64,000 nt of DNA, from positions 124,001 to 188,000 of the IMG/VR virus record IMGVR_UViG_3300024503_000015. One strand, given 5' to 3'. Numbering within the stretch: position 1 is the stretch's first letter; each line of letters starts with the position of its first letter. The notes below the pieces were generated by a model. It saw only the letters and a program-made list of their open reading frames with translations. It did not search any database and had not been told where the DNA came from. The position numbers and the translations under genes were made by a program. Below are positions 43,279-46,415 of this stretch, piece after piece.

Positions 43279-43572
43279 TTAGTTAATTAGCATTCTGATC
43301 AAGCCAACTGTGTCGATAGTGGTTAGCAAGATATAGTTGGCTAGCATACCAAATGATTTTCTAGTATAAGCGGCCCACGCATACATCGCACAGCCGCTAA
43401 TCCATACAGGATACAGAGCAAGCAATGGCGGATTAGGTACAGTAACGGCCATAGTAATACTACAGCCAATACTAACAGCCCAGGCAAGTAACTCAACAAT
43501 AAATCGAAATGGATGACTATTCCAGTCATCCTTGATCCATTGTATAGTTGGCCCAAAAATAGCGTCTATCAT
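43279..43572 (-). CDS. Small membrane protein, 97 aa
   Basis: Three hydrophobic helices. Confidence 0.6.
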   Translation of the reverse strand: MIDAIFGPTIQWIKDDWNSHPFRFIVELLAWAVSIGCSITMAVTVPNPPLLALYPVWISGCAMYAWAAYTRKSFGMLANYILLTTIDTVGLIRMLIN

Positions 43573-43829
43573 TTGTCTTTGCCAACAGTAACGATAATTG
43601 TTTCTAAATCATCGAAATCACTGAATACATCGTTCCAGTTGCCTTTGTGTGCAATACTGATTGCTTTGTTAATTAGTGCAGGTTTGATTTCTAATTCTTC
43701 TGCTACTGCCTTAACTGTTTCTTTTAAGCCTTCTGTCAGACTTTCAATTTCATATTTGACTTGAACGCCTTCGTTAATTAGTCGCTCTAGTTTGGCCTTT
43801 TCTTCTGGTCCATAGGTTCTATTGCCCAT
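43569..43829 (-). CDS. Small dsDNA-binding protein (T4 DsbA/GapR-like)
   Basis: Size and helical pattern (EKAKLERLINEG...LKETVKAVAEELEIKPALINKAISIAHK) recall T4 DsbA. Confidence 0.55.
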   Translation of the reverse strand: MGNRTYGPEEKAKLERLINEGVQVKYEIESLTEGLKETVKAVAEELEIKPALINKAISIAHKGNWNDVFSDFDDLETIIVTVGKDK

Positions 43830-43941: not shown

Positions 43942-45720
43942 TTACTTTGCTGGAGCCGCAGGTGCTGCCGCAGGAGCCGCAGGTTGTTGTCCGCCTGCTG
44001 CCTTAGCCTTTTTAAGTTTGTCTAACTTGGAAATTACAACATCTAGACGTTTTTGGACATCTGCTGGTAAGCCTGCTTTGATTGCAGGATCTTGTCCATA
44101 TTGATCTAGAACTTTCAAATGCTTCTGTAGTTCTGCTAGATCTTTTGGATCCATTTCAATGTCACCGCCGCTAAATGCTTTCCATAGTGCGCCTAGTGCC
44201 AATGCCCCACCAACAGCGGCAGTTGCAATAGCCGCTTTTGGATTCTTTAGTACACCAAGTGCCTTTGATCCTGCGCCTTTGACAAAGTCCATGGCACGTT
44301 GTCCCCAACTTGGTTTTGGAGTAATGTCTCTGAATGGAACATCGATGACGTTTGGATTAGCACCACCTGGTGTAGATAGTGCCGGTAGTTTGCCGCCAGG
44401 ACCAGGTAGTGCTGGCACAGGTGCTTCACTTAGATAATCTCTTGTAATAGCAATTTGTTCTGCTTCGCTAAAGTATTTGATATTTTTCATAACAAACGCT
44501 CTTGCTTCGTTTTCAGTCATTGCTAATACATCTTCTTCAGTTACACTTTCAGAAATTTTGTACTTAGTAACGATTGCTTCGATAGCAGTTAATGATTGTG
44601 TTAACTGACTACGTGCAACGATATTTTTACCGTCTGCCAATAGTGTAGATAGTTCAGGAGTAACTTTACCAGTTTCTGGTTTGCCTGCCATCTTTTCAAA
44701 TGCTTTAATACCAGCAACAGTTTTAGGACCCATCTTACCATCGATTGGACCAGGGTCAACACCTAATGCTTTTAGTTGTTCTTGAATTTTCTGAATTGCA
44801 GGATCTGCACCAGCAGTCTTCTTATCTTGTGCAGTCTTATCTTGTGCAGTCTTGTCTTGAGATGCTTTAGTATCAGCGGCAACTTTATCTGCTTCTGCAC
44901 TTGCGGCATCTAAGTCTTTATCCATCTTTGCATCGTATTTTGCTTTTTCGGCTGCTTCAACATCTGCAACAGTTTTCTTAGCATCATCGATTGCTTTACG
45001 TACTTCTGGATCATCTCCTAAAGTTTCTAATTCGTCAATTAACGCATTAATTTGATCTGCCACTGCCTTGGCTTCTGGACTTAGTTGCTCTTGCATTGGT
45101 ACATCACCAACTACGTCTTGGAATTCTCTCATCAATGATTCAAAGATACTTCCTTCACCAACTTTTAATCCACCAAGTTTTGGAGCATTAGCAGTCATGC
45201 CTGGCATCTTAAGTCCAGTTCCGCTACTTGCTGTTCCGGTATCTGATCCACCAGTAATAGATTGTAACTTTTTAACCAAGTCCGCTAATTGCGGAAGTTT
45301 TTCTGCTTTAATTTCGGCAGTCTGGCGATCTTTATTAACTTTGTCACTAGTACCTTTAACTGCGGTATCGTGTTCGCCTTTGTCGTCGCCACGGAACATA
45401 CGTCCTAGTGCTGTAGATGTTTTTGCGTTTTGTGGAACTAAACCTAGATCTGCAAGTGTTTTATCTGCGCTTGATGTTGCAGTTGCGGCAATACTGTATT
45501 TGCCACCCATGCTGTTTGGCTGTCCTTGCTTGCCAACAAAGTAACCGCTAACAGGATCATACAAACCTGGTAGTTTGTGTTTCCATGCTAGGTCATTAAG
45601 GATCTCTGCACGTTCTTGCTCGTCTGATTTACCAGCAACTGCGGCTTCAACGTCTTTGATTGTGATAGCCTCTGCAAGTACTACAGTATCCAATTTGTTT
45701 AGAATTGATCTAATATCCAT
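43942..45720 (-). CDS. Probable capsid-internal/ejection protein with peptidoglycan-binding domain
   Basis: IQEQLKALGVDPGPIDGKMGPKTVAGIKAFEK is a PG_binding_1 signature; hydrophobic AAIATAAVGGALALGALW; late-like promoter upstream. Confidence 0.7.
   Translation of the reverse strand: MDIRSILNKLDTVVLAEAITIKDVEAAVAGKSDEQERAEILNDLAWKHKLPGLYDPVSGYFVGKQGQPNSMGGKYSIAATATSSADKTLADLGLVPQNAKTSTALGRMFRGDDKGEHDTAVKGTSDKVNKDRQTAEIKAEKLPQLADLVKKLQSITGGSDTGTASSGTGLKMPGMTANAPKLGGLKVGEGSIFESLMREFQDVVGDVPMQEQLSPEAKAVADQINALIDELETLGDDPEVRKAIDDAKKTVADVEAAEKAKYDAKMDKDLDAASAEADKVAADTKASQDKTAQDKTAQDKKTAGADPAIQKIQEQLKALGVDPGPIDGKMGPKTVAGIKAFEKMAGKPETGKVTPELSTLLADGKNIVARSQLTQSLTAIEAIVTKYKISESVTEEDVLAMTENEARAFVMKNIKYFSEAEQIAITRDYLSEAPVPALPGPGGKLPALSTPGGANPNVIDVPFRDITPKPSWGQRAMDFVKGAGSKALGVLKNPKAAIATAAVGGALALGALWKAFSGGDIEMDPKDLAELQKHLKVLDQYGQDPAIKAGLPADVQKRLDVVISKLDKLKKAKAAGGQQPAAPAAAPAAPAK
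44821..44861 (+). repeat. 15-bp coding tandem repeat (QDKTA), about 2.7 copies
   Basis: CTTATCTTGTGCAGT twice plus a degenerate third copy. Confidence 0.8.
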
Positions 45721-45746
45721 TTGTTTGTCCCCAAAATCTTATTAAG

Positions 45747-45754
45747 TATTTATC
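45747..45754 (-). promoter_or_regulatory. Late-like promoter GATAAATA
   Basis: 26 nt before the ATG at 45720. Confidence 0.6.
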
Positions 45755-45755
45755 A

Positions 45756-45840
45756 GTGCTCACTTTAAATCGTCAGGGTAGCGAATCCGTTGATTAGCCC
45801 AGCAGCCGGGCACATAACCCCAAACGGTCCTAGGGTATGT
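45756..45840 (-). ncRNA. Candidate pseudoknotted structured RNA
   Basis: GC-rich intergenic stretch; P1 ACAUACCCUA/UGGGGUUAUGU, P2 GCCCGG/CUGGGC, loop CCGUU complementary to downstream AACGG. Confidence 0.45.
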
Positions 45841-45842
45841 TC

Positions 45843-45941
45843 TTACAATTCATAAGGAATTCCGGCTAATCCGCATCCAAAGCGAGCTAACCCTTCTACA
45901 ATGTCATTAAACAGGGCTGTAAGGGTTTCTCGGACGGTCAT
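45843..45941 (-). CDS. Micro-ORF, 32 aa (MTVRETLTALFNDIVEGLARFGCGLAGIPYEL)
   Basis: Translated by hand; amphipathic helix; overlaps the 24 aa ORF in another frame. Confidence 0.4.
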   Translation of the reverse strand: MTVRETLTALFNDIVEGLARFGCGLAGIPYEL

Positions 45942-45981
45942 AGCCATCTTCCTCTGGGTAAACTGGATATTCGTTTTCCAT
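45907..45981 (-). CDS. Micro-ORF, 24 aa (MENEYPVYPEEDGYDRPRNPYSPV)
   Basis: ATG overlaps the dps stop (TAATG), suggesting translational coupling. Confidence 0.5.
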   Translation of the reverse strand: MENEYPVYPEEDGYDRPRNPYSPV

Positions 45982-46415
45982 TATTTTAGAGTTGCTCGCA
46001 ACATCCATGAATGTTTGCGATGAGCATCTTGACGATCTGCTAGGAAATTAGCAAGACCAAATTCATTGTTTGTTTCTGCAATTTTGTACACTAGGCCAAA
46101 TAAGTTAGCCATTTTATCAGAGTCTTCTAATAAAATTTGTGTCATAGATAGTGCATCTGGAATCTCTGTTTCATCATCAATTTTAGTAAGCATAGTGAAA
46201 CGTTCAAAACTACCAGGAGTGTAACTACCACTCTTGCGAATATTTTCTGCAAAAGTATCTATACTTCCATATACTTCTTCGTAGATGTTACCAAATAGTT
46301 CATGAAATTCTGCAAAATCAGGTCCTTCTACGTTCCAGTGAAAGTAGTGTGCCTTTAGATAAAAACTAAATTCTGATGCGAATACTATTTTAAGTGCTTT
46401 TGCTAATTCTTCCAT
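45981..46415 (-). CDS. dps: Dps/ferritin-like protein
   Basis: KAHYFHWNVEG, FHELF, IDTFAENIR ferroxidase motif, KHSWML. Confidence 0.92.
   Translation of the reverse strand: MEELAKALKIVFASEFSFYLKAHYFHWNVEGPDFAEFHELFGNIYEEVYGSIDTFAENIRKSGSYTPGSFERFTMLTKIDDETEIPDALSMTQILLEDSDKMANLFGLVYKIAETNNEFGLANFLADRQDAHRKHSWMLRATLK

What the first reader, a model, noticed from the sequence alone, without database searches (positions are those of the whole stretch)
45756..45840. Candidate pseudoknotted non-coding RNA downstream of dps
Seen (minus strand): P1 ACAUA-CCCUA/UGGGG-U-UAUGU closing loop GGACCGUU; P2 GCCCGG-CUG-CUGGGC; loop CCGUU complementary to AACGG (45791-45787); possible AAUC/GAUU helix; unusually GC-rich for an intergenic region here. 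It ends just before the next gene's promoter, so it is not that gene's 5' UTR. Inference: a ribozyme, processing element or trans-acting RNA. I cannot assign it to a known family.
Basis: partly seen in the sequence, partly recalled or inferred. Interest (0 to 1): 0.62.

Follow-up and report, generated by a model that had tools for sequence, protein, structure and literature searches.

The report
Phage RNA complementary to ribosomal RNA
The flagged stretch is one copy of a small, pseudoknotted RNA found once per genome in hundreds of uncultured freshwater giant phages; its exposed loops are exact complements of a universally conserved piece of bacterial 23S ribosomal RNA (helix 69/70), so these phages probably make an RNA that pairs with the host's large-subunit rRNA.

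Summary
The element is real. Window 45840-45757 (minus strand) belongs to an RNA family with at least 244 distinct sequences in IMG/VR phage contigs. It occurs once per genome and has no match in Rfam 15.

Covariation supports three hairpins (H1, H2, H3) and a pseudoknot between the H2 loop (GCU) and the 3' tail (AGC). Its CCGUU/AACGG pseudoknot is not.

The new result concerns the conserved loops:
- The H1 loop (CCUUAGGACCG) is the exact reverse complement of E. coli 23S rRNA 1920-1930. In some members the match covers 22-23 of 24 nt across helix 69.
- The commonest H3 loop complements the adjoining 1929-1937.
- A minority H3 loop complements 1966-1976, the opposite strand of the predicted helix 70.
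- H1-loop variants found without constraining that loop keep 9-16 nt of contiguous pairing, through G.U wobble or a shifted register.

Best reading (about 0.45): a trans-acting antisense RNA against host 23S helix 69/70, acting on free or immature 50S subunits. No binding, transcript ends or phenotype have been shown. A ribozyme, a protein-assisted guide or a cis-acting 3'-end element remain open.

The parts
45812..45840 (-).
   Evidence: Predicted by RNAfold. Six H1 pairs all show changes on both sides in homologues. L006 and L004 carry compensatory inner-stem changes.
45823..45837 (-). Antisense block 1 (UACCCUAGGACCGUU): complementary to E. coli 23S rRNA 1918-1932 in 14 of 15 positions, 10 of them contiguous (1918-1927)
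   Evidence: Checked against the real rrlH sequence, locus L353. The family consensus CCUUAGGACCG matches 1920-1930 exactly.
45797..45811 (-).
   Evidence: Stem pairs occur as GC/CG/AU/GU types and are 98.7-98.9% paired.
45804..45806 (-). Pseudoknot, 5' half: GCU in the H2 loop
   Evidence: Loop position 3 covaries with tail position 8: C:G 92, G:C 30, G:G 1, C:C 0 in sets where the tail was left free. In alignment A5 the pair is CG 65, GC 29, other 1.
45768..45795 (-). Hairpin H3: P3 (AAUC/GAUU, 45795-45792 with 45771-45768), P4 (GG/CC, possibly with a flanking C-G across a bulged U: 45789-45787 with 45777-45774) and the 9-nt loop AUUCGCUAC (45786-45778)
   Evidence: P3 and P4 both covary, with 3-6 pair types per position.
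45777..45787 (-). Antisense block 2 (GAUUCGCUACC): 9 nt complementary to 23S 1929-1937, directly adjoining the target of block 1
   Evidence: This 'type 1' loop is present in 164 of 216 unique members.
45757..45766 (-). Conserved single-stranded tail AAAGUGAGCA; its AGC (45760-45758) is the 3' half of the pseudoknot
45839..45842 (-). Semi-conserved GAAC spacer between the upstream stop codon (TAA, 45845-45843) and H1; its last two bases, AC, are the first two of the H1 5' strand
   Evidence: The upstream profile is A-rich from -18 to -9. In 128 loci the upstream stop codon lies 7-17 nt before AGGACC, or is the loop's own UAG.
45747..45754 (-). Late promoter GATAAATA of the next gene (592-aa ORF, 45720..43942). 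It marks the 3' limit of the element and is not part of the RNA.
   Evidence: The NATAAATA motif sits 20-35 nt upstream of many start codons in this genome. Metatranscriptome contigs for the downstream gene end at 45726, 45727 and 45751, at about twice the depth of the dps operon.

Best explanation
Window 45840-45757 (minus strand) encodes one member of a previously uncatalogued, single-copy ncRNA family of about 75-110 nt in uncultured freshwater T4-like giant phages.

The fold is shown by covariation. It has three consecutive hairpins. An H-type pseudoknot joins the H2 loop to the 3' tail, and H3 sits inside the pseudoknot's long connecting loop.

The sequence shows directly that the two conserved exposed blocks are antisense to one continuous, universally conserved stretch of bacterial 23S rRNA. 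H1 (with its optional inner hairpin P1a) complements helix 69 and the linker after it, about 1909-1933. The common H3 loop complements 1929-1937, the 5' strand of the predicted helix 70. A minority H3 loop complements 1966-1976, the opposite strand of the same helix.

Inferred mechanism: the RNA is made as the 3' end of the upstream operon (a late operon in this window) and may be released from it. It then pairs in trans with host 23S rRNA where helix 69/70 is open. That would be nascent or immature 50S particles, or free 50S subunits, in which this interface is reachable. Pairing would hold helix 69/70 in a non-native state and so interfere with, or reprogramme, 50S maturation or subunit joining.

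The pseudoknotted H2 core would act as a rigid scaffold that presents the two arms, or as a binding site for a partner.

Shown: the family, its fold, its copy number and the complementarity. Inferred: expression as a discrete RNA, binding, and any effect on ribosomes.
For: Family and fold:
- At least 244 unique sequences exist.
- There is one significant hit per genome in six large phage records, including a complete 352-kb genome.
- All helices covary, as does the pseudoknot pair.
- G.U outnumbers A.C 76 to 30 in paired cells, which favours the gene-sense strand.

Complementarity to the real E. coli rRNA:
- The H1 loop matches 23S 1920-1930 in 11 of 11 positions. The type-1 H3 loop matches 1929-1937 (9 nt). 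The type-3 loop matches 1966/8-1976 (9-11 nt).
- The longest Watson-Crick run against 16S+23S falls in 23S 1915-1940 in 206 of 216 members. Its mean length is 12.2 nt, against 9.1 for shuffled, 8.8 for reversed and 8.9 for opposite-strand controls.
- Whole H1 domains match helix 69 antisense in 23/24 (L161), 22/24 (L065), 19/23 (L160) and 14/15 (window) positions.
- The P1a 3' strand is GUU[AG]C, the complement of 1910-1914, at near-native spacing in 84 of 115 members against 3% in shuffles. No search pattern imposed this.

Variation behaves as target pairing predicts:
- 26 H1-loop variants were found with a pattern that did not constrain H1. Of these, 25 keep 9-16 contiguous pairs with 1916-1933.
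- A-to-G changes give a G.U wobble with U1923.
- Members with an internal mismatch carry a CUACC extension in 15 of 26 cases, against 35 of 218 canonical members.

Energetics and target:
- Net cofold gain with 23S 1900-1985 is -18.3 kcal/mol, against -6.6 and -6.9 for controls.
- The 18-nt target is identical in E. coli and in 36 of 81 sampled genomes of another phylum; the reversed control gave 0.

Plausibility from the literature:
- A synthetic PNA against helix 69 inhibits E. coli growth (Kulik 2017, cited in PMC7038079).
- MazF-mt6 reaches helix/loop 70 in 50S but not in 70S ribosomes (PMC5408214).
Against: - There is no direct evidence of a discrete transcript, of binding, or of any effect on ribosomes.
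- In four river metatranscriptomes the element is covered less than both flanking genes. Only assembled contigs were available, so ends and strand are unknown.
- Most members were retrieved with patterns that forced the conserved blocks, so counts across members are not independent.
- In mature 70S ribosomes the target is paired or buried.
- The two antisense blocks lie in 'parallel' order: the 5' block binds the 5' part of the target. They therefore cannot form one continuous duplex, and closed loops limit helix length.
- Type-2 H3 loops (28 of 216) have no significant rRNA match.
- In the type-3b subgroup a sense GGCGU just upstream of H2 could pair with the H3 loop within the molecule.
- The type-3 target is not conserved in every phylum.
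- The H2-loop match to 16S 519-527 is probably chance. The G3 variant breaks it while preserving the pseudoknot.
- The complementarity could be a relic of a captured antisense rDNA fragment.
Confidence: 0.45

Rival explanations
1. A guide rather than a blocker. The same base-pairing arms position a phage or host protein on 23S rRNA (or on rrl DNA) to cleave, modify, repair or shield the helix 69/70 junction, for example shielding it from single-strand-specific toxins of the MazF type that cut helix/loop 70.
For: The complementarity evidence is the same as for the best explanation. The invariant pseudoknot core and the AAAGUG tail have no rRNA match and could be a protein handle. Helix/loop 70 is a known toxin target that is accessible in 50S. 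A few members (GGAAUUCGCUAC) extend pairing across UUCC with one bulge.
Against: Flanking genes fall into 51 clusters on each side, so no partner gene is linked. No box C/D motifs are present: 0 of 202 have a C box. The two guide blocks overlap at G1929-G1930, which leaves no unpaired target nucleotide as an H/ACA pocket would. Most members do not cover the UUCCU site.
Confidence: 0.15
2. A cis-acting 3'-end element of the upstream transcription unit: an unusual terminator or insulator, a block to 3' exonucleases, or an RNase processing site. On this reading the rRNA complementarity is an evolutionary relic or plays no role.
For: The element always lies right after a stop codon and on the same strand as its neighbours. 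It is followed at once by an A/U-rich, almost G-free stretch and very often by a promoter: 34 late-like and 61 sigma-70-like of 211. A T-run follows in 32 of 211. Metatranscriptome contigs break in or around the element in two of four runs.
Against: A general terminator or stabiliser should recur many times in a genome of 270-350 kb, yet there is one copy. The loops are far more conserved than a stability element needs. A relic cannot explain the wobble or register-shifted variants that preserve pairing, nor the independent type-3 loop aimed at the opposite strand of the same rRNA helix. There is no U-tract in the window copy.
Confidence: 0.15
3. A self-cleaving ribozyme of a new class. The invariant unpaired nucleotides and the pseudoknot would form an active site that processes the polycistronic transcript.
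For: The element is small and has a pseudoknot. About 25-30 near-invariant unpaired nucleotides sit amid covarying stems, and the gene context is variable. All of this is typical of small ribozymes in phage DNA. One RNA contig ends inside the H1 loop at 45830.
Against: There is no match to hammerhead, twister, twister-sister, pistol, hatchet or HDV models even at E<=10. Contig ends are frequent at this depth (4-7x), so the 45830 end carries little weight. The conserved loop sequences are already explained by rRNA complementarity, and their variants track the target rather than a fixed core.
Confidence: 0.1
4. A decoy or protein-binding RNA unrelated to rRNA pairing, or a DNA-level element such as an origin or a single-strand initiation or recombination site.
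For: A single copy per genome at a fixed neighbourhood (dps ... dsbA-like) would suit an origin-like or regulatory site. Covariation alone cannot separate RNA from single-stranded DNA.
Against: The excess of G.U over A.C points to RNA of the gene-sense strand. The pseudoknot and three covarying hairpins are atypical for double-stranded DNA sites. Nothing in this reading accounts for the rRNA complementarity and its compensated variants.
Confidence: 0.06

Closest known systems
U3 and related eukaryotic/archaeal small nucleolar RNAs that pair with pre-rRNA (established knowledge, not tested here)
   Same: Both are trans RNAs carrying several short (8-15 nt) antisense blocks to highly conserved rRNA segments that form helices in the mature ribosome.
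   Different: This RNA has no C/D or H/ACA boxes, no known partner proteins and a different fold. It is encoded by a bacterial virus, whereas no rRNA-pairing small RNA is known in bacteria or phages (my own knowledge). Its effect is unknown.
Group II intron exon-binding sites EBS2/EBS1 pairing with IBS2/IBS1
   Same: Two separate loops recognise two adjoining target segments in the same 'parallel' order, with the 5' loop binding the 5' target segment.
   Different: There are no intron domains, no catalytic domain V and no reverse-transcriptase gene. The element is about 90 nt and single copy. The resemblance is one of geometry only.
Synthetic anti-helix-69 PNA (Kulik et al. 2017, cited in PMC7038079)
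   Same: Antisense pairing with helix 69 of 23S rRNA; the synthetic oligomer inhibits E. coli growth.
   Different: The PNA is an artificial, linear oligomer. The phage RNA is natural and structured, has two arms, and reaches into the helix 69-70 linker and helix 70.
Loop-initiated antisense RNAs of plasmids and phages (CopA/CopT, RNA I/RNA II, P1 c4)
   Same: Complementary bases are presented in hairpin loops to nucleate pairing with a structured target hairpin. Here H1/P1a is itself an antisense copy of the helix 69 hairpin.
   Different: Those RNAs are cis-encoded and fully complementary to an mRNA or primer of their own replicon. This one is trans-encoded, and its apparent target is host rRNA.
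Ribosome-binding 3' elements of plant RNA viruses (TCV T-shaped structure; BYDV element with 18S complementarity)
   Same: Both are roughly 100-nt viral 3'-proximal modules of hairpins and pseudoknots, with proposed rRNA or ribosome binding.
   Different: The plant elements act in cis as translation enhancers in eukaryotic hosts. Here the upstream genes differ from phage to phage, and the target is bacterial 23S helix 69/70.

Membership tests
Any Rfam 15 family (4227 models) | Covariance-model match | tested here: not met
   No hit at gathering score over the 64-kb window. No hit at E<=10 in 45600-46100. No hit at E<=1 in four other member loci.
tRNA / tmRNA / tRNA-like | Cloverleaf with acceptor stem, recognised by ARAGORN | tested here: not met
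   ARAGORN found no gene in the window. No conserved acceptor-type pairing of the 5' flank with the tail; the outer helix seen is not conserved.
Known self-cleaving ribozyme classes (hammerhead, twister, twister-sister, pistol, hatchet, HDV-like) | Class-specific core sequence and structure | tested here: not met
   No Rfam model matched.
Self-cleaving ribozyme (any class, including new ones) | Site-specific self-scission | not testable with these tools
   Needs an in vitro cleavage assay. The contig end at 45830 is uninformative at 4-7x depth.
Box C/D guide RNA | C box RUGAUGA near the 5' end and D box CUGA near the 3' end | tested here: not met
   C box in 0 of 202, D box in 6 of 202, both in 0.
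Box H/ACA guide RNA | Bipartite guide flanking an unpaired target dinucleotide in an internal-loop pocket | tested here: not met
   The two antisense blocks lie in separate hairpin loops. Their targets abut and overlap at G1929-G1930.
Riboswitch or other cis-regulatory leader | Consistent downstream (or upstream) gene family and an expression platform | tested here: not met
   51 gene clusters on each side. A promoter lies between the element and the next gene.
Intrinsic terminator | GC-rich hairpin followed directly by a U-tract | tested here: not met
   A T-run of 5 or more within 4 nt of the tail occurs in only 32 of 211 members and not in the window. The last hairpin is separated from the end by a 10-nt conserved tail.
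Type III toxin-antitoxin RNA (ToxI-like) | Tandem repeats next to a toxin gene | tested here: not met
   One hit per locus and per genome. No conserved neighbouring gene.
Trans-acting base-pairing (antisense) RNA | Conserved exposed sequence complementary to a defined target, with variation that preserves pairing | tested here: met
   11-15 nt plus 8-9 nt complementary to 23S 1919-1937; wobble and register-shifted variants keep 9-16 pairs.
Trans-acting base-pairing (antisense) RNA | Physical pairing with the target in cells | not testable with these tools
   Only a thermodynamic prediction is available: -18.3 against about -6.7 kcal/mol for controls.

The most novel reading that the evidence does not exclude
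The element is an RNA-guided weapon against the host ribosome. Its H1 and H3 arms dock on the helix 69/70 junction of 23S rRNA, and the invariant pseudoknot core (GGCUGCU with AAAGUGAGCA) is catalytic or recruits a nuclease or modifying enzyme. The phage would then cut or chemically alter host large-subunit rRNA at a defined site. That would make it a natural trans-acting rRNA-directed ribozyme or guide RNA in a bacterial virus.
Probability: 0.08. Interest if true: 0.97.

Novelty: categorically new. Interest (0 to 1): 0.85.

Why it matters
No bacterial or phage small RNA is known, to my knowledge, to act by pairing with ribosomal RNA. Full-text searches found no precedent.

If the pairing is functional, it would be a new way for a virus to take hold of the translation machinery. 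The target is helix 69, the central bridge between the ribosomal subunits, and the sequence is so conserved that one RNA would work in almost any bacterial host.

The finding would also matter in three other ways:
- It would give a natural template for antisense inhibitors of the ribosome.
- It would add a widespread structured-RNA family (hundreds of freshwater phage genomes) to the catalogues.
- It is directly testable with a 90-nt transcript and E. coli ribosomes.

Even if the rRNA link proved to be a relic, the covariation-supported three-hairpin pseudoknot fold is a solid new RNA family.

Tried and rejected
- **Rfam:** searched at gathering and permissive thresholds on the window and on other members. 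Nothing was found.
- **Cultured phages and E. coli:** blastn of the spacer and of a canonical member against GenBank phages and E. coli genomes gave no relative. The Dps protein finds only a 35%-identical cyanophage protein.
at shuffle level.
- **Outer helix GCUCGCUUU/AAAGUGAGC** from the 260-nt fold: rejected. The 5' strand is coding (Ala-Arg-Phe of a micro-ORF), and synonymous changes break the pairing.
- **Reading the element as protein-coding:** rejected. The spacing between blocks varies out of frame.
- **Programmed frameshift or readthrough signal after the stop codon:** rejected. The loop UAG shows no in-frame preference (26 in-frame, 40 and 14 in the other two registers), and nothing coding follows.
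- **H2 loop pairing with 16S 519-527** (9-nt match): judged coincidental. 30 variants break it while keeping the pseudoknot.
- **Sarcin-ricin-loop resemblance** (AGGACCGG in sense, 23S 2662-2669): only an 8-mer in the sense control.
- **Targets inside the phage genome:** none for either loop.
- **Type-2 H3 loop:** no significant complement in E. coli rRNA or in a 23S from another phylum, even allowing wobble.
- **RNAalifold on a plain MAFFT alignment:** recovered only H2. A covariance model seeded from six sequences was needed.
- **One wasted scan:** the pattern meant to find loop position-4 variants matched canonical sequences through the stem.
- **A full duplexfold scan:** timed out and was replaced by run-length and cofold tests.
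- **Metatranscriptomes:** only assembled contigs were available, so no transcript ends, strand or abundance could be derived.

Full report
**What is at the coordinates**

The window is bases 124001-188000 of a 270-kb IMG/VR viral contig, estimated 71% complete. The contig encodes a T4-type DsbA-like protein, a Dps/ferritin-like protein and a peptidoglycan-binding protein.

On the minus strand, dps (46415..45981) is followed by a 260-nt spacer and then a 592-aa ORF (45720..43942). They are 52% G+C in a 39.5% genome.

Folding energy alone is unremarkable, z = -0.6. The better score of the whole spacer (z = -3.0) depends on an outer helix that relatives do not keep. Rfam has nothing here even at E<=10, and there is no tRNA.

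**It is a large family**

Fetching loci around Dps homologues and comparing spacers showed that 45757-45814 recurs at variable distances downstream of dps. Four blocks are conserved:
- CYUAGGACCG
- CGGCUGCUG
- a 9-nt loop, usually AUUCGCUAC
- AAAGUGAGC(A)

These blocks are separated by stems that change in a compensatory way.

In all, 244 distinct sequences were collected. A scan of 185,579 species genomes found only two convincing copies, both on contigs of metagenome-assembled genomes. No cultured phage has the element.

A covariance model finds exactly one significant copy in the window's genome and in five other large records, one of them a complete 352-kb genome with terminal repeats.

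**Fold**

A model seeded from six gap-free sequences aligned 99 members twice. Results for the given structure:

| Measure | Alignment A4 | Alignment A5 |
|---|---|---|
| Cells forming standard pairs | 91.4% | 93.3% |
| Same, after shuffling | 60.2% | 69.7% |
| Same, partners slid | 34-45% | 27-45% |
| Covariation score | 0.67 (shuffled 0.18) | 0.50 (shuffled 0.13) |

Every helix has pairs changed on both sides. These alignments are fitted to the model, so the numbers lean towards it. The compensations are nonetheless plain by eye.

The architecture is as follows:
- H1, with an optional inner hairpin P1a
- H2, a 4-bp variable stem with a 7-nt loop
- H3, made of P3 plus P4 with a 9-nt loop
- a single-stranded tail

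G.U outnumbers A.C 76 to 30 in paired cells, which favours the gene-sense strand.

**Pseudoknot**

A different pseudoknot is supported. A scan for H2 loops with a non-C at position 3, leaving the end of the tail free, returned 30 unique GGGUGCUG loops. Of these, 29 have the tail AAAGUGACC instead of ...AGC. Pooling the sets in which the tail was unconstrained gives C:G 92, G:C 30, G:G 1, C:C 0.

The H2 loop GCU therefore pairs with the tail AGC. A rarer variant (GGCUACUG with AGAGUGUAGC) extends the pairing to 5 bp.

**Context**

The stop codon of the upstream ORF lies 7-17 nt before AGGACC, or is the UAG inside the loop itself (18 of 128). There is no frame preference.

Flanking genes are diverse, 51 clusters on each side. 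The commonest downstream gene is the DsbA-like one (30 of 122).

Downstream of the tail the sequence turns A/T-rich and almost G-free. It often carries a sigma-70-like or late-type promoter. In this genome NATAAATA is the late promoter. The window copy is followed at once by GATAAATA (45754-45747).

River metatranscriptome contigs cover the downstream gene at about twice the depth of the dps operon. They break in or near the element in two of four runs. Only contigs were available, so this shows no ends, strand or abundance.

**The key result: complementarity to rRNA**

I first recalled the resemblance from memory. I then checked it against the real E. coli rrnH operon, fetched as locus L353.

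Exact matches of the conserved blocks:
- H1 loop CCUUAGGACCG is the exact reverse complement of 23S 1920-1930.
- The type-1 H3 loop complements 1929-1937.
- Type-3 loops complement 1966/8-1976.

Frequencies of H3 loop types among 216 unique members:

| H3 loop type | Members | rRNA complement |
|---|---|---|
| Type 1 | 164 | 23S 1929-1937 |
| Type 2 | 28 | none significant |
| Type 3 | 16 | 23S 1966/8-1976 |
| Type 4 | 4 | weak, gapped match to 16S 1380-1390 |
| Other | 4 | not assigned |

The longest Watson-Crick run against 16S+23S lies in 23S 1915-1940 in 206 of 216 members. Its mean length is 12.2 nt, against 9.1 shuffled, 8.8 reversed and 8.9 for the opposite strand.

Whole H1 domains are antisense copies of helix 69 plus its 3' linker:

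| Member | Matching positions | 23S region |
|---|---|---|
| L161 | 23 of 24 | 1908-1930 |
| L065 | 22 of 24 | 1910-1933 |
| L160 | 19 of 23 | 1910-1931 |
| Window | 14 of 15 | 1918-1932 |

The 3' strand of P1a is GUU[AG]C, the complement of 1910-1914, in 84 of 115 members against 3% of shuffles. No search pattern imposed this.

For a rough sense of chance:
- An 11-mer matching anywhere in 4.4 kb has a probability of about 1e-3.
- A second 9-mer landing on the adjoining site has about 1e-5.

**Does variation respect the target?**

A scan defined only by the H2 loop and the tail gave 26 H1-loop variants lacking AGGACC. Of these, 25 retain 9-16 contiguous pairs (Watson-Crick plus G.U) with 1916-1933. 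The mean is 11.3, against 6.8 for shuffles.
- A-to-G changes make a G.U wobble with U1923.
- Members with an internal mismatch carry a CUACC extension that pairs with 1929-1933. This holds for 15 of 26, against 35 of 218 canonical members.

The window's own subgroup lacks one U on the 5' side but gains GUU on the 3' side. It keeps 10 contiguous pairs.

A cofold of member RNAs with 23S 1900-1985 gives a net gain of -18.3 kcal/mol after both partners are unfolded. Controls give -6.6 (shuffled target) and -6.9 (other 23S windows). The same fold pairs 1933-1941 with 1968-1976. Type-1 and type-3 loops therefore attack opposite strands of one helix.

The 18-nt target is identical in E. coli and in 36 of 81 sampled genomes of another phylum. 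Many of the other genomes may simply lack an assembled rRNA operon. The reversed control gave 0.

**Limits of the complementarity evidence**
- The H2-loop match to 16S 519-527 is probably chance, since the G3 variant destroys it while conserving the pseudoknot.
- Type-2 loops have no convincing rRNA target.
- Type 4 has only a gapped 16S match.
- In the type-3b subgroup a sense GGCGU next to H2 could pair with the H3 loop internally.
- The type-3 target differs in at least one other phylum.
- Most members were retrieved with fixed words, so they are not independent observations.

**Mechanism**

Shown: the family, its single-copy status, the fold, the pseudoknot, and the complementarity with pairing-preserving variants.

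Inferred: the RNA is made as the 3' end of the upstream unit. In this window that unit starts at a late promoter near window 49356. The RNA would then pair in trans with host 23S rRNA where helix 69/70 is open, and disturb 50S maturation or subunit joining.

Two published facts make the target plausible. A PNA against helix 69 inhibits E. coli (PMC7038079). MazF-mt6 cuts helix/loop 70 in 50S but not in 70S ribosomes (PMC5408214).

The 'parallel' order of the two arms resembles group II intron EBS2/EBS1 geometry. It means the arms cannot form one continuous duplex. The pseudoknot core may be a scaffold, a protein handle or, speculatively, catalytic.

**Comparison and novelty**

The element meets no tested membership criterion of Rfam families, tRNA-like RNAs, known ribozyme classes, C/D or H/ACA guides, riboswitches, terminators or ToxI-type RNAs.

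It works most like a loop-presented antisense RNA, and conceptually like U3-type rRNA-pairing RNAs. Four literature searches found no phage or bacterial precedent.

I rate the family and fold as secure (above 0.9), functional rRNA pairing at about 0.5 to 0.6, and the specific ribosome-blocking outcome lower. The stated explanation as a whole gets 0.45.

Noticed in passing
window 45907-45981 and 45843-45941 (minus strand): Two small overlapping ORFs lie between dps and the RNA. One encodes 24 aa (MENEYPVYPEEDGYDRPRNPYSPV); its ATG overlaps the dps stop codon. The other encodes 32 aa ending ...LARFGCGLAGIPYEL, in the +1 frame. Both peptide sequences are conserved in relatives with synonymous changes (for example CGC to AGG for Arg), so they look like real micro-genes. 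In some relatives the second ORF ends at the UAG inside the RNA's H1 loop.
   Followed up: partly
G000 (whole contig) 239723-252576 and 258267-258669; outside the window: ARAGORN finds 32 tRNA genes in one cluster. One has a CUA anticodon, so it is an amber-suppressor type that ARAGORN labels Pyl. ARAGORN also calls a tmRNA. The phage invests heavily in translation. I did not test whether TAG is reassigned; ORFs in the window read normally under table 11.
   Followed up: no
window 45747-45754, about 49356, and about 40 other sites in G000: NATAAATA (often GATAAATA) lies 20-35 nt upstream of many start codons and is 13-fold enriched there. It is a T4-type late promoter consensus for this phage.
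   Followed up: partly
window 43569-43829 (minus strand): An 86-aa DsbA-like protein (PF11126, below the cut-off; phrog_12534, E = 5e-19). In 30 relatives this gene sits directly downstream of the RNA, behind a sigma-70-like promoter. Here the 592-aa peptidoglycan-binding-domain gene is inserted between them.
   Followed up: partly
window 45913-45954: Two metatranscriptome contigs match only 36-42 nt of the micro-ORF region and then continue into unrelated sequence. A related phage sharing this short conserved piece is therefore present in the same river samples.
   Followed up: no
L355, L357, L360, L364, L365, L376 (H1-H2 region): A subgroup has a longer, two-hairpin 5' domain. It carries a sense copy of 23S-like (AAU)GGCGU next to H2 together with an antisense ACGCC(A) H3 loop. 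This raises the possibility of an extra intramolecular pairing, or of mimicry of helix 70.
   Followed up: no
L048:5493-5561: A weak model hit (22.5 bits) has H2, a type-3b H3 and the tail, but lacks the H1 antisense hairpin. It may be a degenerate or minimal variant.
   Followed up: no
L208 and L214 (genome contigs): The only two convincing copies in 185,579 species genomes lie on contigs of metagenome-assembled genomes labelled Lishizhenia and Haliscomenobacter. These are probably binned phage DNA. They could instead hint at the host, but the sigma-70-type promoters next to many copies argue for other hosts.
   Followed up: no
L235:3925-4018: This is the single member combining a GGGUGCUG loop with an unchanged GAGC tail, which gives a mismatch in the pseudoknot. 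It is otherwise nearly identical to L231 and L261, which have the compensated tail. It may be an evolutionary intermediate or a sequencing error.
   Followed up: no
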